A DNA stretch of 64,000 nucleotides, from the NCBI RefSeq assembly GCF_000315625.1, contig NW_005434671.1, positions 817,798-881,797 of the forward strand, read 5' to 3'. The stretch's first letter is position 1, and every line of letters starts with the position of its first letter. The notes below the pieces were generated by a model. The model made no database searches, was not told the origin of the DNA, and worked only from the letters and a program-made list of their open reading frames with translations. This DNA is from Guillardia theta CCMP2712. Lineage: Eukaryota > Protista > Cryptophyta. The position numbers and the translations under genes are program-made. Below are positions 19,119-36,359 of this stretch, in pieces.

Positions 19119-19828
19119 ATGCTGGCCAGACTGCCTGCAAGGATGCTGCGATGCGCTGTGGCCATGCCAGCAGTCGCCTCCTGCTTCATCATGCCGGGGA
19201 ACACGATGCTTTCATCTGCAGGCCTCAGCTTGAGGCGGGGAGTGAGCAGTTTCGCTTGGCCATCGCAGAGATCTGTTGTTTGCGCAAAGGTACGTGCAAG
19301 CTACGTTACACCCGTTCACGCTTGTGTCTGATCAATTTTGATTTGTGCCAATCACCGATCCTCTAGACAAGACAAGGTAGCTAAGTCTCATCCTTCAAAC
19401 AGCAGTATCTTACTTGGTTGATCAGTGCTGAAATTCCAACCATGCTACATGAGCACAGACGCGTCTGCCCCGGAGGAGGACACAGTTATGTCCACCATTG
19501 AAAAGAAGATAACTTCTGGTTTGCTATGACACCAAGTTCACAACAGGTCTTGATCTTTTTCGCAGAGTTGAAGCCCGTGAAGCTTGAGGTCATTCCAGCT
19601 TACGGCGATCCCAACGGCAGCCACGTGACCATTAACGTGGTTTCACAAGCCTTCGAGGGCAAGCGAGCGGTCCAGCGACAGCAGATGGTGTACAAGGTAC
19701 ATGACAGAGAGCGTTGCACAAGGCTGCTGTGACACCGTTCACTTCAGGTCATCTGGGAGGAGATGCAGGGAGCCATTCACGCTGTTGATCAGATGAAATG
19801 CCAAACCCCGGCTGAGGCTGGGATGTAA
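19119..19828 (+). CDS. BolA-family protein (plastid BolA4-like) with organellar N-terminal leader
   Basis: ELKPVKLEVIPAYGDPNGSHVTINVVSQAFEGKRAVQRQQMVYK/VIWEEMQGAIHAVDQMKCQTPAEAGM*. The leader has AVASCF followed by a Ser/Arg-rich stretch. Confidence 0.9.
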
Positions 19829-20055
19829 ATCTTCAATGAAAGAGTTGTCAGTGTTGCATGTCCTTGCAATTTACATTTGAATTGTGTGTCAATGTTTCGG
19901 TTTGGAGGGCACAAGGGAAAATTCTAATCAAGGTCAGATCGCTGAGAGCGGATCGAAGGTTTTTTTCACAGAGAGACATCGTTACATTAGAACGAGAAGG
20001 TCAAGATTCGATGAAGGGGAGAAATTACAAATGTAGGTCACACAGCTTGCCATCT

Positions 20056-20896: not shown

Positions 20897-20959
<63 letters not shown>

Positions 20960-20960
20960 G
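20897..20960. repeat. (CTGT)n microsatellite
   Basis: About 15 tandem CTGT units. Confidence 0.95.
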
Positions 20961-21265
20961 CTGCCTTCAGATCTTCTTTCCTCCTTCTCCCTTGCCCTTC
21001 TCGTTATGCTCAGGGCTCAACCGACATAGGAGGAAATTCACCGTTACTGCCAGCAACTTGCAAGTGTAACGTGCGCAACTGATCTATGGGCGGAGCCTTG
21101 ACAACCAGATAGTTATTTTCTACCCCGTCATAGGACAGTCGAAATGATGAAAAGGTGGGGTAGGGGTGGTGTGTCCATGGGAGGAAGCCCAGACCGGGGG
21201 CCGATCAAGGATGGTGGGGGAAGGTCGAGAGGAGGAAGGAGGAGAGATGCCATGACACGTAGGAC

Positions 21266-23878
21266 ATGAGGCAGCAGGAAGTTCTCCACGTCTTCGTGCT
21301 CCTCGCCTTCTGCATAAGGTCCTCCGACTTGGCTGGAGCTGGTGTGAAGCGATGCTGCGGTTCACATAGATTCTTCCCCGCGCTCGTCAGGAGGCTTCGT
21401 GGTGGCTCGGTGGGGGAGAAGGGGACGTCAGCCCCTGAGAATGACGACAAAGACGATGGCACATGCATGTGTTGCTGTGAACCCATGGAGACTGTTGCTC
21501 TTTCCCTGTGTGGGCATCACAGCGTTTGCGGGCTGTGCAGTTATCGACTTCGGGTACTCCTGAACCAAACTCAGTGCATCTTCTGCCAGCAGATATCAGA
21601 GAGCGTCTTCATAGCAGACTCTCGCGACTTCCCCCCGCAAGGCCCCATGGACCACGTTGTCTGGGACAATCAGACCAAAGTGTGCTTCGAGACCGAAGAG
21701 CTCGCTTCTCGCTTCCGCGCCCTCACGGTGGCCAAGTGTACAACATGCGAAGAGACTTTCAACACGGTGAAACAGCTACAGAGTCATACGAGAACTTGTC
21801 ACAGGCTGAGGTACTGCTGGCTCTGTCTAGAGAACAGGAAGATCTTCATCTCGGAGCAGGCGACCTACGACCAACAGCAGTTCCGTGTGCATCTGACAGG
21901 CAGAGATGGCAGCGGCCTCAAGTCAGGGCATCCGCTGTGTAAGATGTGCTGGAGGCGCTTCTACGATGACACGCAGCTGATCTACCACATGTCGCAAGAT
22001 CACTTCGCCTGCCACGTCTGTCAGAGGCGGAGGGAGGACGACGATCGCCAGCAGGTGGAGTTCTTCCAGAACTATGAGCAGCTCTTTGCGCACTTTCGCT
22101 CGGAGCACTACGTATGCGAGGAAAGGAGCTGCATGGATCTGAGGTTCATCGCGTTCGGGACCGAGTTGGAGCTGTTCTCGCACATGTCAAGCGAGCATGG
22201 AGGGTCAACGAGGCGAAGCGTGCGAGACGCGATCTTGAGCCAGACGATCCTGCAGGAATACCGACGGAGTGACGGTGGGAGAGGGCGAGGAAGGAGCAGC
22301 CGTCCGGGGAGAGGAGCGCAGGCACACAGGGGACAGGTGGCAGAGCGGATGGGGGATACAGGCTTCGCCGCTGGCTCCACGAGAGGAATCGGGGGGAGGG
22401 GTAGACGTTATCAACGCGGAACTCCGAGAGCGGGGTTGAGGAACGAAGATCCCGACAGAGCAAGCTTGCAAGCCAGCCAGGCAGATGGATCAGAGCACTT
22501 GATAGTGTCGGGGATCAACATAACCCAGCTGAGAGAGAGATATGAGAGGGAGCTCAGCTCGTCGAGAAGGCCGGAGGAAGGGAGCCCGACTAGGAACGAG
22601 AGGTTGAGCAGAGGTGAAGGAGGAATGACGGATGTTCCTGACGTGTTCTGACTTGATCTTATCTCAGAGGAGTTTCCTTCCCTCCCAAACGCGCAGGAGC
22701 AGCCGCAGCCGGTGGCGAGCGCCATGTCGGATCAAGCCGCTGCCACAGCACAGACCATGTCCAAGAAGTTCTTTTGCGACGAGCTCACCAGCCAACGACG
22801 AAATCTCTCCGCGGAAGATTTCCCGTGAGTTCCCCTCTCGGTAGAACTCAGCCAAATCACACGCTTCCGCAGATCGTTGCCCTCTCTCGTCACTCGGGAC
22901 CCTAGTCGAGTGGGTGCGAGCAGCGAGGCTGACAAGGATCTTGCCGCCCTCATCGCCAAGAATGCATCGACGACTTCGTCAAGAGCCAGCAAGCATGTCG
23001 TCACCAATCTCTTCATGAGCGGGAGGTTGCTGTCTCTGAGAACGTCCGAGTCAAGTCGCTCTTGGCGAACTGTTGTGAGTGACAGGGGAGGGAACAACTC
23101 CCTTGCCTCCAGCAAGACCGTCGAGGTTCCCAATGACGCTGAGTGAGACTTTTGCCTGCCCCCCTCCTTCCCATGACTGCAACTCGCTGACCCAGAGCTT
23201 GTAGGTACCCTCCTCTTCCGAGCTTGCATGCTCAAGAGAGTGGCCGTTCTTCTGATCGAGTGCAGACAGCGGCTACCCCAAGAGGCAGGTTGGAGGAGGA
23301 GAACCAAGAGGATCTACAGCAGAAGGAAGCAGACCTCAAGATCGCGCGTGAAACGGCTGTTCGGCTCCTCGGCAGAGACACTTACAGTGTTCTTGAGGTG
23401 TTCGCTGTCTTCATATCCCCTCCTCAACCCTATCCTCCATGTCTGATTGCCTGTTCACCTCTTCCTGCCTTGAGTTGCGCGCATACACCTTCCCCCTTCC
23501 GTCCTACCCTACCTTGCCTTGCTGTTGTCATACTCTATCCTTTTCTTTCCCCCATACACTCTCCTCCCCCCTATCTCCTCTTATGCGAGTCCATGCATGC
23601 AGAAAGCTTTCGAGGACGCCTGCCGACTTGCTCGTACGAGAGATTCAACGAGGCTGTTGCTGTCCGAGCACCTTCAGTCTCTCCGACTTCTCTCCGAGCA
23701 TGGTGCTCTCCTTTCGACCATGGACTCCTTGTGCAAGGGCACCAGACCCTCTTTCGCAGACGAGCTGCTCGAGCTCGTGTCGGTGAGCTGCGGGGGTTCC
23801 GCCATGTTGCCCATCCTCCTCACCGTATCTTGCAGGCGTCTCAGCGCAACCTTGCGGCTCTCACCAGAGACAATCTGA
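21266..23878 (+). CDS. ZNF598: ZNF598/Hel2-type RING E3 ubiquitin ligase with an N-terminal signal-peptide-like leader
   Basis: RING CMCCCEPMETVALSLCGHHSVCGLCSYRLRVLLNQTQCIFCQQ. C2H2 array including YCWLCLENRKIF, GHPLCKMCWRRFYDDTQLIYHMSQDHFACHVC and FFQNYEQLFAHFRSEHYVCEERSC. EEFPSL motif downstream. The 3' exons are less certain. Confidence 0.9.
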
Positions 23879-23966: not shown

Positions 23967-25125
23967 TCACAATTTACTGTGTAGCAACACGTGCATCGAT
24001 GAACCTAAATGGAGTCAGAGTCACTTTCACAGCGGACGCTTGCGAGACAGACCTGGGTACGTTGGCAACTTCAGGCCAAACTCGTCACGGATAGCAGGAG
24101 GCACAAACCGCCCCCCTAGAAAATGGTGCCCTGAACACGCTTCAGCTCCCCGAAAGACGTTGGGGCAGCGGACCTTTGAAGTGCTTCGCACACAACTTAG
24201 GTGCAGTCAGAGAGATCAGAACTGCAGGCTCCAAGCCGACTCCCCCCTTGTTGCCCTCGTTGACGTCCCAGCCCTGGCAGTTGAATGAGAGAGGTCGAGA
24301 GGACAGGCCTCGATATGCATCACAGATGGAACATCGACAGAGACTATTGGCTTCGAGATCTGAAAGCATCAAGCTGGTCAGGGACCTATTCGATCTTTCC
24401 CTCATCCTTTCACCTTCTTCAGCGTACTGATAATGTCTGCGAAAGGAGCTCGGATCTCTCCCTTGAAGGAGAACCCAAAGATCGCATCCACCACCACGTC
24501 AAAATCGCGTTCGATCGCCTCCGCCGAGGGCAGCTCTTGCAGCACGGGGACGTCAAGGCTAGCCAGCTGAGTCACCAGACCCTGATACAAAGGTTTCGCT
24601 GTTTGCTTCGGATAGCACACAACAGGCTTGTAGCCAAAGTGATACAAGTGTCGAGCTGCAACCAACCCGTCCCCTCCGTTGTTCCCTGGCCCACAAACAA
24701 CAAGGATCCTCTGCAGATTTTGCGCGCAATACTCGGACGTTGCAGTAGCTACGCTCAACCCAGCAAGCTCCATGAGCTGGTCGATAGAGAAACCCAGTGG
24801 CCCTGGGCAATGGCGTCAGCAGCTCTTCCCATCCCTATGGCAGCCAACCCATCAACTTCTCGTCGATCTCCGCTGCCTTGGATGCTTCAAGGAAAGCCAA
24901 GTCCTGCAGCGAGCACGCCATGGTGCCCTGCAGCCGGTCAGCACAGGACGAGGAGAACAAAAACGAGTCCCCCCGTATCGGAACGATCGCGAGTGGGAGG
25001 AGCGTTGTGAGATAGACATTCATCCTCGGGCCCTTGGAACGAGTGACTGCGTGCTGGGAGCGTTGGCGTGCACATCTCAGCCCGGCAAATCTCAATCCGG
25101 GGATGTCTTTAAAGCGCAACATCAT
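23967..25125 (-). CDS. NAXE: NAD(P)HX epimerase (YjeF_N / APOA1BP)
   Basis: AAEIDEKLMGPLGFSIDQLMELAGLSVA, VCGPGNNGGDGLVAARHL, VDAIFGFSFKG, GWDV, LISLTAPK, HFLGGRFVPP. The last exon gives YPGSSMHVLLHSKL*. The start codon is uncertain. Confidence 0.95.
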
Positions 25126-26640: not shown

Positions 26641-28478
26641 ATGAAAAAGTACTTGAACCGATTCTGGGGGTCTGCTGATGGATTTGATGGGAAGACAACC
26701 CTGAAACAAATCTCAAACTCAGAGAATTTATCAATTCAGAGGGTTAGCAAAGACAAGGGGGGAGTAGGCCTCAACGGAACGAGTAAACGGGATGAAGATG
26801 GTTTCGGCGATCAAGGTAAACTCTTCTTACAGGGTTACATCGAGCGAAAGTCGAACAAGAACGGATTCCAGAAGAAGTGGAAGGTCCAATACTTCGTGCT
26901 CAAAGACTCCAGGCTCCGTTACTACAAAGACCAAGTTAATTACTTGGATGGTGAGCAGGAAAAAGGAGAGATATACTTGAATGGCATAAGCATAAATTTC
27001 GGTGCAACCAAGGTCAACATGTCAGGAAATCCTAGATACGTCATGTTGTGTGAAGATAGATGGAAGAAAAAAGTCTTTGTTCTGGCATTCACCTCCGAAC
27101 AAGAGAGAAATACTTGGTACGAAGCGCTCCAGATAGCTGTATCATCTGCCTCGGCTCCAGAAAAGAACGTGAAAGCATCGAAAAGCACTTCTCAGCGCAA
27201 GAGTTCATCCCCGTCAAACAATCGCCAGAATTCTCTTTCTTCTGTTATGGATTTCTTATCGGGTTCCACATTCCAATTGCCATTTGCTTCTAGGAAGCCG
27301 AAATGTAACTTTTCAGAATCGGATAGAAACACTCAGACCCATTCGAAGGTTGCGAATCTAATGCTCGAAATAGTCACGCAGAACCCTCGGAATGACAAGG
27401 ATGTAAATGTTTATATCAAATCATCGAAGGGAGGTCGATATGGGGTTGAGTTGATTTGTGAAGGACATCATGACAACCTTTGGACATACACCTGGACGTA
27501 CAACATCGACTACGTGCAGCTGAATTGTGAGTCAAGGGCTCGCCGTATTGTCGTTGATTGGAACAACAAGTGTGCCTGGATCAAGGGAGACATTGAGATA
27601 GACGAAGAGTACGATGAGGAGTTTGGAGACTTGATGCATATCTACAAGGAACACGACTGTCTGTTGATTCACTCAACGATTCCTTTCTCTCCTCGCTGGA
27701 ATTGGATAGTCGGGAAAAGCGACCCCCAGAGGCCGTACAAGATTTCCCTCAAGGACAGTCTGTCGGGATCTGAAAAGCAAGTCACTCTTCCGTTGCAAAT
27801 TTCCCATGGGGGCCACACTGTTGCTGCCTTCAGTGCAAGCAAGACTGAAGCATTGCTGTCTTTGATGGAGGTAAGTTGGCTGCCCTTGTGGTTTTGGCAC
27901 AAGCATGAACCCTCCAAACAGATAGGCGAGGAAGATCAGTGGATACTGATCAGTATCACTTTTGTTTTGAGCATGTTTATTTCTATGGATGGAGGTGAAA
28001 CATGTGACTGTTCTTTTCACTTTTTTTAATCCTAATTCGAATACCTCTAGATAACCTGAACTTACCTGCTCTTGATATCACATCATGCTCGTCAACCTCC
28101 AGAAGTCCAACTGGCACATGTAAGGAGCATGCTTTGAATTTGCTGAAGATGACTTTGAGTTCCAGCGACCTACGCACGAACTCCAATACGACAAGACAGC
28201 TTTGGCGAGTGGAGTCACTCAGTCCCAAAGACGACTCAAAGTTGCGTCGGTGAAGACCTAACAGGCGATGAGACCGGGAAGGGTATCCGTCAAAAAAGAC
28301 TTGTCTTGGGCTGACTCAGACGCAGGGAGACCTTTAATCGGACTGCAAGCGCCGTTCCATCTTGACGAACCTTATCCTCATCCTGATTCTGTGTATTGTC
28401 CGCACGAGAACAAGGAAGGAAGTTAGAGTCTTATCAACTGCGAATTGTAGCTTAGGTATTCTTGCCGCTTTCTTTTAA
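26641..28478 (+). CDS. PH-domain protein with an uncharacterised C-terminal beta-rich domain; 3' end uncertain
   Basis: LQGYIERKSNKNGFQKKWKVQYFVLKDSRLRYYKD...EKGEIYL...FVLAFTSEQERNTWYEALQ is a canonical PH domain. Long first exon, with introns near 27871 and 27995. Confidence 0.8.
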
Positions 28479-28598: not shown

Positions 28599-28982
28599 TC
28601 ATCTGCATCGACTAACATGTCTTGACGCGCCTTCATCCCCACCTCGCAGCCGTAGAGGAAGCTTAGTTGTCTCTGCACATTCGAGGCTCATTTCCGAACT
28701 ATCTGAGACCGAGGAAGCCATGACTTTGAGCGCCTTGGTGAGCTCGCCATTAGCCTCGTGGTGCTCGGCCAGCTGGCGAGAGAGCATCCTGTTCTCCATC
28801 TCCAGCCTGAGGATAGACTGCTGGACCTCTGCATACATGGCTGGGTAAGGGCAAACGTCGATCGTCATTCTTGACAGTTTCGAGGGGCGCGCTTCTCCTC
28901 CATGAGCCAAGAGAAGCATGGCAACCAGAACTGTTGATAGTGCTCGTCTAAGAATGGCGGTGAATTGTTGAGATAGAATCAT
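28599..28982 (-). CDS. 127-aa hypothetical protein: signal peptide, coiled coil, LRLRGG, 12-aa tail
   Basis: MILSQQFTAILRRALSTVLVAMLLLAHGGEA, heptad-like QQSILRLEMENRMLSRQLAEHHEANGELTKALK, then LPLRLRGGDEGASRHVSRCR*. Confidence 0.6.
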   Translation of the reverse strand: MILSQQFTAILRRALSTVLVAMLLLAHGGEARPSKLSRMTIDVCPYPAMYAEVQQSILRLEMENRMLSRQLAEHHEANGELTKALKVMASSVSDSSEMSLECAETTKLPLRLRGGDEGASRHVSRCR

Positions 28983-29007
28983 TTTGTACAGGAGTGTAGA
29001 AGAGTAA

Positions 29008-29053
29008 GGAGGAGGAGGAGGAGGAGGAGGAGGAGGAGGAGGAGGAGGAGGAG
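29008..29053. repeat. (GGA)n microsatellite just upstream of the small LRLRGG gene
   Basis: About 15 tandem GGA units. Confidence 0.95.
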
Positions 29054-30359
29054 GCTTCGTCAAGTGAACAACCGACGCTCCAGGCACAGTAGGATCGAGA
29101 AAGATATGGCGGAGTGAGAGAACCACCAGCTGTGTAAACTAAGGAGCAGAAGAAAGGTCCGACAGTTCACGCGAAGGAGCGAGAACGATCAATAATGCGT
29201 GGAATTCCCCGACCGGAACCCACTCGGTGTATCGAAAACGTATTCCTCGATCCTTTGCAGGTAGCCGCTGTTTGTTTCTGATTCTTGCTTCTCAGAGCCT
29301 GTCTTGCTGTCTTGAGTTGCCTTGACCTGCCTTGTCTTGATCTGTCTTGACTTGTCTGGTCTTGTCTGCGTGTATCTACTCTCCTTGCACGTTCTTGCCA
29401 AATGACATGGAGCCTCTAATAAAAGAGCTTCGGGTGAAGTTTCCCACTTGAGGGGTATAGCCAGTCAGGGGGTCCCCTTTAACCTCCTGACAGTTAAACT
29501 CTGTAAACCAGTGGGTACTTACAGGACAATTAGCTGGTAGGGGTGATCGAAGTACCGGTGTCGTTTAACGACAAGGGCTACGTTACAAGGGAACAAGGGG
29601 GTGGTGGGGTAGGGGTACGTATTCAAAGTGAGTTAAGACTACCTGCGAAGGGGTAGGGGTTACCACCCCACCGTGGAATGAGAGTGCAAGACATAGAGCT
29701 ATGCTGGGTACTATTCGAACAAGATACCCTACCAGTTCGGTACGATGTTCTAAAGGATCAGGTGTTTGACCAATGTTGACGAGGGTGGGTACATGACTAC
29801 CCGTTCTGTGTAGGCGCTCAAGAAGAGAAAAAGGGGGTAAATTGGATAAACTACGGGTACTCAACGAAACGTTGTTTATTCTTGAGGCCGAAAGGGGAGG
29901 CGGCCGCAAAGCGGTAGCAAATCAATATACATGTGCATATTATATATATATATAACACTGTAAAGTATCTTTTACGAGTTGAATATAATATTTTATATAC
30001 AGTAAAAAAACTAATTGAAGTTTTAATAACATATATAATCATTCGTCATTTTAAATGCGAAGCGTTGGTATTTGAAGAGTTTTCAGGAATTAAGTCTTCT
30101 TTACATGATCCAGAATCCTACTTTTCGATAGTTTGACTGGTGTACCCCTCCATTTTCCAGGAATTTGGAAAGAAATATGTAGGTGGGGGTGCGTATGCTA
30201 ATTTAACAGCTCACCCGTAGTAAAGAAGGGGTTCTGTACTCACCACCCTTCTATTGATAAGGAACAAGAAGTATTTTCATGGGTGGGGTCATCTCAGTGA
30301 AAGAAGTCAGAGATGCATTTTTTTACGTACAGGGAAGTTAAGTTAAAAATCAGGCAGTT

Positions 30360-34313: not shown

Positions 34314-36359
34314 TCACATTGCAGCCATTCTTGCGCGGGTCTCTTCCAAGGCTTCAATCTTGTTCGCATCCACCATTACCTGAAATGGAATGAATTCGTG
34401 CTGAAACTCAAAAACCTTCGCACCATTATCGTTTCATCCAGGCGTAAGATCGCTGTGTTCACTCTTTCCATCTGTTGTACAAGGGCCTGTCGAATTTCCA
34501 ATGAGCGAGCTGCGTCATTTGAAATCAGGCCAAACCTGATACTTCTTCATTTGCTTGTCTGTCAGGTCGGAGACCTCCCCTCCAACTCCAATGAAGTTCT
34601 CGCACTCGCGCCTGAGTTGTCTCGTCAACTTCCTGCACGTTAGCAGAGGTCCGCTTACTTCTTCTCTTCTCTCTTCAGCAGCAGGAAGTTGATCGTTCTG
34701 TACATCTCATCCTCAACAATGCTGCAACCGTACGTCACTCGTCCGCAAGTGCAGGGGAATCCAGTCAAGCTCACCTGCATACTTTCGGGAGGTCCACGTA
34801 CCAAAGGAAAAAAGTCCGCTGTGTGTTGTGATCGATTGTCCGTGGAACCTGAAGGAGTAGATGACGATCGGGCAGAGAACTTCAAGAGCTCACCTCTTGC
34901 AGCCGGACGAACTGCGCTTTCAGCATCTTGCACAGGATCTGCAGCATGAGTTACGAGGGAGCATCCTTTCAACGAGGAGGGGACGAGGTACAGAGAATAT
35001 GAGGAGCCTGGGCCAGGACAATCCTCTGACTGCTGTAGAAGGGTTGAACTTACGTCATTCGCATCTTTCTTCGGAACCATGCTCAGGTCCCACACCGTCT
35101 TCGACTCAAGGTACTTCCTCTCCAGGAGCAGGCGGAATATCCTCCTCCCCCTTGCCGTAAACTTCTTCTCAACGATGCTCTCGAGGATCTGTTGTCGCAG
35201 CTCCATCATCAACAAGGAGATGTCGGGCTTGAACGTGGAGCCCTCCGATCCTCCTCCCATCAGCTTCGTGACACTCTTGAACGCAGGATCTTGGCAGAGA
35301 GCAGAGAGCTGCTCGCTCAGCACCTCCCAAGTGCGGACTACATTCAGATCCTCATTCCTCCCCTCAGACGCATCCAGCATAGCATCCACAGAAGCTGAGG
35401 GGATGAAACCGTTGGCCAGGTTAGCCGGCTGCAGGGCACGGTTTCGGATAGTGCGGAGGAGGAGCCTCATGAGCGAGGCAGTCTGAGGACCGAAACGATC
35501 TTCCATCAGCTGCGCTATTGCCGCAGTCCTGAAGTCCCAGAGGAAGGCTGGGGTGTTGACCCTCCACGTCGACCCTTCGTTGTCGATCGACTCCTTCAGA
35601 GCTCCATCTTCCTTCAGCGGGATCCCTGCGGCTCCGTTGTCTAGTTTCACCAGCTTGCTTTCCCGCTCCTCGCCTGCCGAGCCTGCTTTCCTCTTGCCCG
35701 TCTTCTTCTGCGTGGGCGAGAACAGTACGGCCGGAGTGTCGGCCCTCTCCATGTTCGATTGCGCGCGGACGATGTACTTCTCTTGGATCAACAGGTTCCC
35801 AGCTTTCACCAGCTTGTCCTCACTGATCTCCTCGTCTCCATACTTGCAGTGTTCGATGATCTGAGCCATGCTAGCTCGGCCATGCTCCAGGATGGCCTCC
35901 ATCACTTGGGACGCCACCCGTGCGTGTTCCATGCTTGCCTGCGACTTGATGTGCGTGCAAAACTTGGGGTATCGGAGCCGCAGGCTGGCCTCCTCGACCT
36001 CGAAGTGGTAACGGCACTCTCTCGCCGCCGACGTGCTGTCAACAGTGACCGAGACCTGCCATCCTCTTCAGCTTCCAGCAGGGTAGGGGGCCAAAATGCA
36101 CACCAGGTTGTGTTGAATTAGGACAAGCAGGTTGTTCCTGAGGGCAGCGCTCCCCAGCTCTGTGTCAGCTTGCAGCTCCTTGAGCGTCCGTTGCGATCTG
36201 CGTATGAGGGCTGCGCAGACGCTCTCGCTCGCTGCTCCGAAGTGATCCTTTACAACCTGACCGACATGTTCACATCTCGCGCGTAGGGAGGGGATCAGAG
36301 GTTACCTGCAGTGCAGCTCCCTGCAAGCCGTTCAGGATCGCTGGTCGTGCAGGAGGCAT
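34314..36359 (-). CDS. RPC3: RNA polymerase III subunit RPC3 (C82/RPC62)
   Basis: VVKDHFG..SESVCAALIR, LRNNLLVLIQHNL, VMEAILEHGR, WRVN...F...FR, ILESIVEKKF...RRIFRLLLERKYLE.K.V.DLSMVPKKDA, and C-terminal ILRLDETIM. Confidence 0.9.

What the first reader, a model, noticed from the sequence alone, without database searches (positions are those of the whole stretch)
21266..21700. ZNF598/Hel2 ribosome-collision ligase with a signal peptide: ribosome quality control for nucleomorph ribosomes?
Seen: MRQQEVLHVFVLLAFCIRSSDLAGAG plus a basic transit-like stretch precedes the RING in one uninterrupted exon. The next Met lies inside the RING (CMCC), so a leaderless isoform from this exon would damage the RING. 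Established: ZNF598/Hel2 ubiquitinates 40S proteins of collided 80S ribosomes, and the cryptophyte PPC contains nucleomorph-derived 80S ribosomes. Inference: this is a host-encoded RQC factor imported to monitor the endosymbiont's translation.
Basis: partly seen in the sequence, partly recalled or inferred. Interest (0 to 1): 0.75.

Follow-up and report, generated by a model that had tools for sequence, protein, structure and literature searches.

The report
Periplastid-targeted ZNF598-type ubiquitin ligase
The cryptophyte alga Guillardia theta has, besides an ordinary copy, a second gene for the enzyme that flags collided ribosomes, and this copy carries the kind of import leader found on proteins shown to enter the relic cytoplasm of its engulfed red alga, so that compartment probably runs its own translation quality control.

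Summary
Window 21266-23146 (+) is a three-exon gene of about 592 aa on Guillardia theta scaffold JH992967.1. It encodes a ZNF598/Hel2-family RING E3 with all zinc ligands intact.

The protein starts with a signal-peptide-like segment (aa 1-26). A basic stretch follows and ends in RRLRGG (aa 42-47). The next Met (M68) lies between the first two RING cysteines.

Four results support import into the periplastid compartment (PPC):
- The transcript-derived Hanusia phi orthologue keeps the whole leader.
- Only this cluster among the 150 best family representatives has such a leader.
- G. theta has a separate leaderless paralogue, GUITHDRAFT_148660.
- All six GFP-tested G. theta PPC proteins end their presequence in (L)RGG just before the mature domain, as this leader does.

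The deposited NCBI model is a 247-aa fragment without the leader, so earlier N-terminus-based screens could not see it.

The role in sensing collisions of nucleomorph-type 80S ribosomes is inferred, not shown. Caveats:
- SignalP and ASAFind could not be run.
- No other cryptophyte orthologue was found.
- Two RING positions that I take to face the E2 are substituted.
- Phylogeny cannot tell host duplication from endosymbiont origin.

The parts
21260..21262 (+). In-frame TAG two codons upstream of the start codon. It fixes ATG 21266 as the first possible start in this exon.
   Evidence: Read directly from the sequence.
21266..21343 (+). Signal-peptide-like segment, aa 1-26. The n-region is MRQQE and the h-region is VLHVFVLLAFCI. 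Small-residue -3/-1 sites lie at positions 19 and 24-26.
   Evidence: Kyte-Doolittle 9-residue maximum is 3.38. AlphaFold gives a short helix at 9-16 with pLDDT below 50, detached from the fold. Hanusia has MPRMRLRPKP followed by LLVCLLLASCISAC. SignalP was not available.
21344..21406 (+). Transit-peptide-like stretch, aa 27-47. It is basic with no acidic residue, holds the conserved K28, and ends in RRLRGG (aa 42-47, nt 21389-21406).
   Evidence: Searches give the invariant leader residues K28, H34, R35, L40 and R42-G47. Validated G. theta PPC presequences have the same ending.
21407..21454 (+). Acidic pre-RING segment, aa 48-63. It is the likely N-terminus of the mature protein if processing follows the GG.
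   Evidence: In the alignment, leaderless homologues begin at about this point. The processing site is inferred.
21455..21718 (+). ZNF598-type RING finger, aa 64-151. All eight zinc ligands are present. C69 and Q108 stand where the family has V/I/L and K/R.
   Evidence: Pfam PF25447, E 2.1e-9. Column counts come from the 71-sequence alignment.
21458..22255 (+). Confidently folded RING plus C2H2 zinc-finger core, aa 65-330.
   Evidence: AlphaFold2 with a 71-sequence alignment gives pLDDT mostly above 90 over this span. The invariant Cys/His columns are kept.
22001..22183 (+). zf-C2H2_13 domain of the ZNF598 family, aa 246-306.
   Evidence: Pfam PF23230, E 6.8e-10, 39.4 bits against a cut-off of 27.
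21266..22613 (+). Exon 1, aa 1-449 plus one base of the next codon.
   Evidence: ORF list. The donor is G|GTGAAG at 22614. The exon is colinear with Hanusia P0001.
22614..22667 (+). Intron 1, 54 nt, GT..AG.
   Evidence: The reading frame is restored and matches Hanusia ...SRDEFPSLPNAQEQP.
22668..22824 (+). Exon 2. It holds the first [DE][DE]FPSL motif of the family's C-terminal region.
22825..22872 (+). Intron 2, 48 nt, GT..AG.
22873..23146 (+). Exon 3 with the stop codon TGA at 23144-23146. The second DFPSL motif spans the junction of exons 2 and 3.
   Evidence: Pfam finds no domain in this exon.

Best explanation
This is a nuclear gene of Guillardia theta for a second ZNF598/Hel2-type RING ubiquitin ligase. 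It carries a bipartite targeting leader.

Proposed route (inferred):
- The signal peptide (about aa 1-25) takes the nascent chain into the ER lumen that surrounds the complex plastid.
- The transit-peptide-like stretch (aa 27-47, with conserved K28 and a non-aromatic first residue) takes it across the periplastid membrane through the ERAD-derived SELMA translocon.
- It stays in the periplastid compartment (PPC), because it lacks the aromatic +1 residue needed to go on into the stroma.
- The leader is probably removed at or near the RRLRGG motif.

Proposed function (inferred from the family only): in the PPC the RING and zinc-finger core recognises collided nucleomorph-type 80S ribosomes. It ubiquitinates their 40S proteins using the PPC's own ubiquitin and E2s, which starts ribosome rescue and quality control. 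The leaderless paralogue GUITHDRAFT_148660 does the same job in the host cytosol.

Shown here: gene structure, family membership, conservation of the leader, existence of the paralogue, and the shared presequence hallmark. Not shown: the localisation itself, the processing site and the substrate.
For: Family:
- Pfam RING_ZNF598 and zf-C2H2_13 both score above their gathering cut-offs.
- All invariant Cys/His of a 71-sequence family alignment are present.
- Named hits are ZNF598, Hel2 or RING-type E3 proteins.
- The core folds with pLDDT above 90.
- Two C-terminal [DE]FPSL motifs of the family are kept.

Leader is real:
- An in-frame stop lies two codons upstream, and there is no alternative Met before the RING.
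- The transcript-derived Hanusia phi orthologue has the same n-, h- and c-regions and RRLRGG.
- The leader is 37-48% identical between the two species against 81% for the core. I read this as the faster drift expected of a targeting peptide.
- Hanusia's n-region holds four basic residues ahead of a 14-residue h-region. By the positive-inside rule this indicates a cleavable signal with the C-terminus translocated.

PPC type:
- No c-region cleavage candidate exposes F, Y, W or L.
- All six GFP-tested G. theta PPC proteins (EF-1alpha, 14-3-3, RRM1, CyP, Ubc8, ugg-t) end their presequence in LRLRGG, SLRGG or PLRGG immediately before the mature domain.
- The string LRGG occurs only three times in the cryptophyte plastid-protein table. 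At least two of those are from one entry that lacks an aromatic +1.

Context:
- A leaderless paralogue lies on another scaffold. Its first in-frame Met after a stop is the annotated start.
- G. theta commonly keeps one cytosolic and one PPC copy of translation factors.
- The PPC holds 80S ribosomes, nucleomorph-encoded S20/uS10, ubiquitin, E2s and a proteasome. A PPC Ubc8 was GFP-verified.
Against: - No SignalP, TargetP or ASAFind score could be computed. The cleavage site is a heuristic guess.
- One formally possible site (A14|F15) would expose Phe, but it lies inside the h-region and is Ser in Hanusia.
- Expression of the leader is documented for Hanusia only, not for G. theta.
- No leader-bearing orthologue was seen in any other cryptophyte or chlorarachniophyte, neither among the 150 best representatives nor in two metagenome scans. 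An essential PPC pathway might be expected to be widespread.
- The clade sits on a long stem of 1.15 changes per site.
- Two RING positions differ from the family. C69 stands where 64 of 71 sequences have V, I or L. Q108 stands where 66 of 71 have K or R. From general RING knowledge I take these to be the E2-contact and linchpin positions. The activity or the E2 partner may therefore have changed.
- The acceptor lysines of nucleomorph 40S proteins could not be examined.
Confidence: 0.55

Rival explanations
1. The protein is imported into the PPC but has been re-purposed. It would ubiquitinate other PPC substrates, for example SELMA import cargo, PPC mRNA-binding proteins or nucleomorph factors, rather than sensing ribosome collisions.
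For: The clade has a long stem branch. Both orthologues have substitutions at what I take to be the E2-contact and linchpin positions, C69 and Q108. The gene appears restricted to Guillardia and Hanusia. The PPC uses ubiquitination for protein import.
Against: The whole RING and zinc-finger core, and both C-terminal FPSL motifs that define the collision-sensor family, are conserved at 81% between the two genera. This argues for retention of the ancestral binding surface. The nucleomorph already encodes an Hrd1-type E3 for SELMA.
Confidence: 0.17
2. The hydrophobic N-terminus is a membrane anchor or an ordinary secretory signal. The ligase would then sit at or in the host ER or endomembrane system, for example tethered to monitor ER-bound host ribosomes, and would never cross the periplastid membrane.
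For: The only hard feature of the first 26 residues is a hydrophobic run. In G. theta the flanking charges are nearly balanced. No predictor was run.
Against: The h-region is only 12-14 residues long, which I judge too short for a membrane span. Hanusia has four basic residues on the N side, which would put the RING in the lumen, where I know of no ubiquitin system. The stretch after it carries K28 and the LRGG ending shared with six validated PPC presequences. That ending is hard to explain for a plain ER protein.
Confidence: 0.12
3. The leader is not part of the functional protein, because of an alternative first exon or start. The gene would then be just a fast-evolving cytosolic ZNF598 paralogue.
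For: There are no G. theta transcript data here. The NCBI model omits the leader. Two tiny upstream ORFs precede the ATG.
Against: The NCBI model is an internal fragment cut at both ends, not an alternative start. The Hanusia transcript encodes the leader from a Met. The leader is conserved in its features and in the RRLRGG and TSAPE blocks. No Met precedes the RING other than M1.
Confidence: 0.06
4. The protein goes on to the plastid stroma, with cleavage at A14|F15 exposing Phe.
For: LLA|F resembles the A|F cleavage motif of stromal presequences.
Against: The site lies inside the hydrophobic core and would give a 14-aa signal peptide. The equivalent residue in Hanusia is Ser. As far as I know, the stroma has 70S ribosomes and no ubiquitin system.
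Confidence: 0.03

Closest known systems
Human ZNF598 and yeast Hel2, the ribosome-collision sensor E3 ligases
   Same: The N-terminal RING_ZNF598 domain, the C2H2 zinc-finger array including zf-C2H2_13, all zinc ligands, and C-terminal FPxL motifs.
   Different: A 47-residue cleavable-looking bipartite leader precedes the RING. It has Cys at the V/I/L position and Gln at the K/R position of the RING. Pfam PF23202 is not detected, but it is also missing in the leaderless G. theta paralogue. No solved ZNF598 structure exists for comparison; the nearest PDB folds are TRAF6 RING-zinc-finger and generic C2H2 arrays at low TM-scores.
Guillardia theta GUITHDRAFT_148660 (XP_005819375.1, P0042), the leaderless paralogue
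   Same: Same genome and same Pfam architecture, with 39% identity over the core.
   Different: It starts MDEDVC directly at the RING. It lies on another scaffold and keeps V and K at the two RING positions. It clusters with environmental cryptophyte-like sequences (the P0002 cluster), not with the leader-bearing clade.
GFP-verified nucleus-encoded PPC proteins of G. theta: EF-1alpha, 14-3-3, RRM1, CyP, Ubc8 and ugg-t (Gould et al. 2006, as tabulated in PMC12136025)
   Same: A signal peptide, then a transit-like stretch with a non-aromatic first residue, then an (L)RGG ending 15-64 residues after the predicted cleavage site, then a mature domain homologous to a cytosolic housekeeping protein. 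The pattern of one cytosolic and one PPC copy is also known for aminoacyl-tRNA synthetases.
   Different: No localisation experiment exists for this protein. No ribosome quality-control factor has been reported in this class in the searchable literature.
ptE3P and nucleomorph-encoded Hrd1, the RING E3s of the SELMA import machinery
   Same: They are RING ubiquitin ligases acting in or at the PPC.
   Different: By my knowledge those are membrane-bound ERAD-type ligases with no ZNF598 zinc-finger array. There is no sequence relation beyond the RING.

Membership tests
ZNF598/Hel2 family of RING E3 ligases | ZNF598-type RING finger at the N-terminus of the mature protein | tested here: met
   PF25447 matches aa 64-151 at 38.0 bits against a cut-off of 27. 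C67, C70, C82, H84, C88, C91, C104 and C107 are all present.
ZNF598/Hel2 family of RING E3 ligases | C2H2 zinc-finger array following the RING, including zf-C2H2_13 | tested here: met
   PF23230 matches aa 246-306 at 39.4 bits against 27. The invariant Cys/His columns from position 158 to 311 are kept. AlphaFold pLDDT is above 90 over this region.
ZNF598/Hel2 family of RING E3 ligases | Closest relatives in an exhaustive search are family members | tested here: met
   The search returned 2219 hits at E <= 0.001. All named ones are ZNF598, Hel2 or RING-type E3 proteins.
ZNF598/Hel2 family of RING E3 ligases | Canonical E2-interface residues: hydrophobic V/I/L two residues after the first Cys, and K/R after the last Cys | tested here: not met
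   C69 and Q108 occur in both leader-bearing orthologues. The family has V/I/L in 64 of 71 sequences and K/R in 66 of 71. The functional meaning of these positions is taken from general RING knowledge, not tested. This does not exclude membership but may alter activity.
ZNF598/Hel2 family of RING E3 ligases | PF23202 domain, seen in most fungal and animal members | tested here: not met
   It is not detected in the window protein, Hanusia P0001, the leaderless G. theta paralogue or P0226. This is therefore a lineage trait, not a peculiarity of this copy.
ZNF598/Hel2 family of RING E3 ligases | Collision-dependent ubiquitination of 40S proteins (uS10, eS10, uS3) | not testable with these tools
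   This needs biochemistry. Nucleomorph ribosomal protein sequences could not be fetched. Only the presence of nucleomorph-encoded S20/uS10 is documented.
Nucleus-encoded PPC-targeted proteins of cryptophytes (bipartite leader without aromatic +1) | N-terminal signal peptide | tested here: inconclusive
   n-, h- and c-regions are present in both orthologues, with hydrophobic maxima of 3.38 and 2.97 and -3/-1 small-residue sites. SignalP and TargetP were not available.
Nucleus-encoded PPC-targeted proteins of cryptophytes (bipartite leader without aromatic +1) | Transit-peptide-like stretch whose first residue is not F, Y, W or L | tested here: met
   The c-region candidates expose S, A, G or V in G. 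theta and A, C or D in Hanusia. The only site exposing F lies inside the h-region.
Nucleus-encoded PPC-targeted proteins of cryptophytes (bipartite leader without aromatic +1) | Empirical hallmark of validated G. theta PPC presequences: an (L)RGG ending just before the mature domain | tested here: met
   RRLRGG lies at aa 42-47 here and at aa 47-52 in Hanusia. It is found in six of six GFP-tested G. theta PPC proteins. It was absent from the five merely predicted entries shown in the same part of that table. This hallmark is my own observation from published sequences, not a published criterion.
Nucleus-encoded PPC-targeted proteins of cryptophytes (bipartite leader without aromatic +1) | A separate cytosolic paralogue without a leader | tested here: met
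   P0042 = GUITHDRAFT_148660 on JH993192.1.
Nucleus-encoded PPC-targeted proteins of cryptophytes (bipartite leader without aromatic +1) | Experimental PPC localisation | not testable with these tools
   Needs a GFP fusion or immuno-EM.

The most novel reading that the evidence does not exclude
The relic cytoplasm of the cryptophyte endosymbiont keeps a ribosome-collision quality-control pathway of its own, started by an imported ZNF598 paralogue tuned to PPC E2 enzymes. In addition, PPC-resident proteins in general, this one included, are matured by a deubiquitinase-like cut after a ubiquitin-tail mimic (LRLRGG) at the end of their presequence. That would link the ubiquitin-dependent SELMA import machine to presequence removal.
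Probability: 0.2. Interest if true: 0.8.

Novelty: new variant of a known kind. Interest (0 to 1): 0.6.

Why it matters
Cryptophytes run two eukaryotic translation systems in one cell. Which surveillance pathways the reduced one retains is largely unknown. No paper in the searchable library links ZNF598, Hel2 or ribosome quality control with nucleomorphs or the PPC.

A ZNF598 copy addressed to the PPC would be the first sign that collision sensing is maintained for about 500 nucleomorph genes. It would give a natural pair of sensors matched to two different 80S ribosomes and E2 sets.

There are two practical points. The deposited gene model hides the leader, so N-terminus-based PPC inventories of G. 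theta are incomplete. The (L)RGG ending offers a simple extra criterion for finding PPC proteins, and a testable idea for how their presequences are removed.

Tried and rejected
- Word-index protein searches found the Hanusia orthologue but missed even the G. theta paralogue. Their blanks say little.
- The exhaustive representative search found the paralogue. Only the best 150 of 2219 hits are listed and none carries names. The three name look-ups identified green plants and algae, Chromera, Diphylleia, fungi and animals, but no red alga.
- The phylogeny is unresolved. A FastTree run joined the leader clade to long branches. A quick mixture-model tree put it next to the green lineage at SH-aLRT 93. 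The careful tree left it in a polytomy. P0164, P0039 and P0189 were left out as long branches, and the rows were thinned to 55. AU tests reject neither a clade with the cryptophyte leaderless copies (p 0.29) nor one with the green lineage (p 0.51). The origin is therefore undecided.
- Two metagenome scans for further orthologues found nothing.
- The exact-sequence look-up of the Hanusia protein found no contig.
- PDB sequence and fold searches found no ZNF598 structure.
- I first read 'sPEL' in a PPC protein list as Pelota. It is a pectin-esterase-domain protein, so it is no evidence for PPC ribosome rescue.
- Curtis et al. 2012 is not held.
- Lists of nucleomorph ribosomal protein genes and their lysines could not be obtained.
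- Spliced model: the joined three-exon protein was not handed to any search, fold or look-up tool. Exon 1 was searched and folded by reference. Exon 3 was scanned by reference. Exon 2 was compared only through the local tblastn of the Hanusia protein against the window. In one search a local script joined the exons only to count codons and stops.
- Nothing in the window looked human.
Full report
**1. What is in the sequence**

The + strand ORF 21266-22651 opens with MRQQEVLHVFVLLAFCIRSSDLAGAG. An in-frame TAG sits at 21260-21262, so no longer N-terminus can come from this exon.

The Hanusia phi protein P0001 (EukProt, transcript-derived, 593 aa) was compared with the window by tblastn. Together with the splice signals, this gives a three-exon gene:
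- exon 1: 21266-22613
- intron 1: 22614-22667, GT..AG, 54 nt
- exon 2: 22668-22824
- intron 2: 22825-22872, GT..AG, 48 nt
- exon 3: 22873-23146, ending in TGA

The total is 592 codons. The exons were joined in a local script only to count codons and stops. The joined model was never submitted to a search or fold tool. Exon 1 and exon 3 were searched by reference, and exon 2 was compared only through the local tblastn.

The window is Guillardia theta CCMP2712, scaffold JH992967.1 of GCA_000315625.1. The deposited gene model for this locus (P0041) is a 247-aa internal fragment. It corresponds to window 21458-22198, running from G65 to H311, and lacks both the leader and the C-terminus.

**2. Family**

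- Pfam places aa 64-151 in RING_ZNF598 (38.0 bits, cut-off 27) and aa 246-306 in zf-C2H2_13 (39.4 bits, cut-off 27).
- An exhaustive HMMER search with the core (aa 60-325) returned 2219 relatives. Those that carry names are ZNF598, Hel2 or 'RING-type E3 ubiquitin transferase' proteins from fungi, animals, plants, green algae, Chromera and Diphylleia.
- Every invariant Cys/His of a 71-sequence alignment is present.
- The two C-terminal [DE]FPSL motifs common in the family are kept.
- AlphaFold2 folds aa 65-330 with pLDDT mostly above 90. Residues 1-47 stay below 50, apart from a short helix at 9-16.
- The PDB holds no ZNF598 structure. The best fold matches are TRAF6-type RING-zinc-finger modules and generic C2H2 arrays at low TM-scores.

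**3. The leader**

Residues 1-26 have a short polar n-region, a 12-residue hydrophobic core (Kyte-Doolittle maximum 3.38) and small-residue -3/-1 sites after positions 19 and 24-26.

Residues 27-50 carry six Lys/Arg and no acidic residue. They end in RRLRGG at aa 42-47.

M68 is the only other Met before the zinc fingers. It lies between C67 and C70, the first zinc pair, so a leaderless product from this exon would lack a RING ligand.

Hanusia keeps the same layout: MPRMRLRPKP, a 14-residue hydrophobic run, small residues, a conserved Lys, and RRLRGG. Four basic residues ahead of a short h-region point, by the positive-inside rule, to a cleavable signal that translocates the C-terminal part. 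They do not fit an anchor that leaves the RING in the cytosol.

Identity between the two species by region:

| Region | Identity |
|---|---|
| signal segment | 37% |
| transit-like stretch | 48% |
| RING and zinc-finger core | 81% |

I read this as the faster drift expected of a targeting peptide whose features are still under selection.

Among 197 family members examined, only this orthologue pair has a Met-initiated hydrophobic N-terminus.

**4. Why the periplastid compartment**

In cryptophytes and diatoms, a signal peptide plus a transit-like stretch leads to the stroma if the first residue after signal cleavage is aromatic (or Leu). Otherwise it leads to the PPC. Acidic residues are tolerated in PPC leaders (PMC12136025 and PMC4494062).

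None of the c-region cleavage candidates here exposes F, Y, W or L. The only Phe-exposing site (A14|F15) lies inside the hydrophobic core and is Ser in Hanusia.

A second line of evidence emerged from the supplement of PMC12136025. It prints the full N-termini of G. theta PPC proteins. All six that were localised by GFP end their presequence in (L)RGG immediately before the recognisable mature domain:

| Protein | End of presequence \| start of mature domain |
|---|---|
| EF-1alpha | MLRLRGG\|GKEKHH |
| 14-3-3 | ALRLRGG\|VDGED |
| RRM1 | PLRLRGG\|FRGD |
| CyP | ALRLRGG\|GLPY |
| Ubc8 | IPLRGG\|ANPT |
| ugg-t | MSLRGG\|AGSD |

The window protein reads ALVRRLRGG|SVGEKG and Hanusia reads VLSRRLRGG|TDAETE. 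The motif lies about 22 residues after the likely signal cleavage, within the 15-64 range of the validated set. What follows is an acidic stretch of the length that leaderless homologues have before their RING.

In the table of cryptophyte plastid proteins the string LRGG occurs only three times. At least two of those are from one entry that lacks an aromatic +1 residue. The five merely predicted G. theta PPC entries in the same part of the table do not show the motif. It is therefore a hallmark of the validated set, not a universal rule.

I found no open paper that mentions this motif together with cryptophyte terms. It may be noted in papers that are not held.

**5. The paralogue**

The best hit after the gene's own cluster is P0042. 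This is GUITHDRAFT_148660 (XP_005819375.1), 540 aa, on scaffold JH993192.1.
- It begins MDEDVC directly at the RING.
- The annotated Met is the first in-frame Met after a stop. It lies downstream of a (PA)n-coding microsatellite.
- It has the same two Pfam domains.
- It is 56-57% identical to an environmental, cryptophyte-like cluster (P0002/P0226) that also starts at the RING.

So G. theta has one leaderless and one leader-bearing ZNF598. The same pattern is known for its aminoacyl-tRNA synthetases and EF-1alpha.

**6. Origin**

The leader-bearing pair forms a 100/100 clade on a long stem of 1.15 changes per site. In the careful mixture-model tree it sits in an unresolved polytomy with the leaderless cryptophyte clade, the green lineage and other protists.

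AU tests reject neither a cryptophyte-only clade (p 0.29) nor a clade with the green lineage (p 0.51). No red algal sequence could be identified among the named hits. Host duplication and endosymbiont origin both remain open.

**7. Function and mechanism**

The literature read here establishes the following:
- The PPC holds 80S ribosomes built largely from nucleomorph-encoded proteins, including S20/uS10.
- The PPC has ubiquitin, E2 enzymes and proteasome subunits, and an imported Ubc8.

From established knowledge of the family, ZNF598/Hel2 ubiquitinates uS10, eS10 and uS3 on collided ribosomes. The inference is that the imported copy performs this step on PPC ribosomes.

One nuance: both leader-bearing orthologues have Cys where 64 of 71 relatives have V, I or L, and Gln where 66 of 71 have K or R. 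From general RING knowledge, not tested here, I take these to be the E2-contact and linchpin positions. This could reflect adaptation to a PPC E2, reduced activity, or a changed role.

**8. Limits**

- No signal-peptide predictor could be run.
- No G. theta transcript was examined.
- No further orthologue was found among the listed representatives or in two metagenome scans.
- No nucleomorph ribosomal sequences could be fetched.
- There is no localisation experiment.

**9. Verdict**

It is best described as a ZNF598-family ligase of a new variant, carrying a bipartite PPC-type leader. It follows the known cryptophyte habit of keeping one cytosolic and one PPC copy of translation-related factors.

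I estimate the probability of PPC targeting at about 0.8. I estimate the full statement, PPC targeting plus collision sensing on nucleomorph-type ribosomes, at about 0.55.

Noticed in passing
window 21389-21406 (RRLRGG); compare published G. theta PPC presequences: All six GFP-tested G. theta PPC proteins end their presequence in LRLRGG, SLRGG or PLRGG right before the mature domain. So do a G. theta FBPase-like protein without an aromatic +1 residue and a Thalassiosira PPC thioredoxin. LRLRGG is, from my own knowledge, the C-terminal tail of ubiquitin. The motif could be a deubiquitinase-type processing site tied to the ubiquitin-dependent SELMA import route. It was not found described in the searchable literature.
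   Followed up: partly
window 28599-29126 (-): A second ORF combines a signal-peptide-like start with LPLRLRGG|DEGASRH about 95 residues after it. The signal-like start is MILSQQFTAILRRALSTVLVAMLLLAHGGEA, internal to the listed ORF. There is no Pfam match and the ORF ends soon after, perhaps at a splice donor. It may be the first exon of another PPC-targeted protein.
   Followed up: partly
window, all six frames: RLRGG occurs 4 times in the six-frame translation, against 0.8-0.9 expected. Only 5 of 200 block shuffles reach 4. Two of the four follow signal-like segments (this gene and 28599-29126). The other two (near 35370 and 5474, minus strand) look like chance.
   Followed up: partly
window 21458-22198: The deposited NCBI model for this gene (P0041, 247 aa) is an internal single-exon fragment. 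It lacks the leader, the last part of exon 1 and exons 2-3, so proteome-wide targeting predictions based on it cannot see the leader.
   Followed up: yes
window 21470-21472 (C69) and 21587-21589 (Q108): Both leader-bearing orthologues replace the family's V/I/L two residues after the first RING Cys with Cys. They also replace the K/R after the last RING Cys with Gln. This may be a change of E2 partner.
   Followed up: partly
window 20897-20961: A (CTGT)n microsatellite of about 16 units lies about 300 bp upstream of the start codon.
   Followed up: no
window 21247-21269: Two tiny upstream ORFs (ATG CCA TGA, and ATG ACA CGT AGG ACA TGA) lie just before the start codon, and the second overlaps it. 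They matter only if the 5' UTR reaches that far.
   Followed up: no
L002 about 2200-2500 (G. theta JH993192.1, upstream of the leaderless paralogue): A long hexanucleotide repeat reads as (PA)n in frame with the paralogue's start. It is open upstream for more than 100 codons but has no Met before the annotated one.
   Followed up: partly
window about 19450-19830 (+), 24402-24773 (-), 26641-28029 (+), 34655-35932 (-): The neighbouring genes are ordinary nuclear genes: a BolA-like protein, a YjeF_N (NAD(P)HX epimerase-type) protein, a PH-domain protein and an RNA polymerase III RPC82 subunit.
   Followed up: partly
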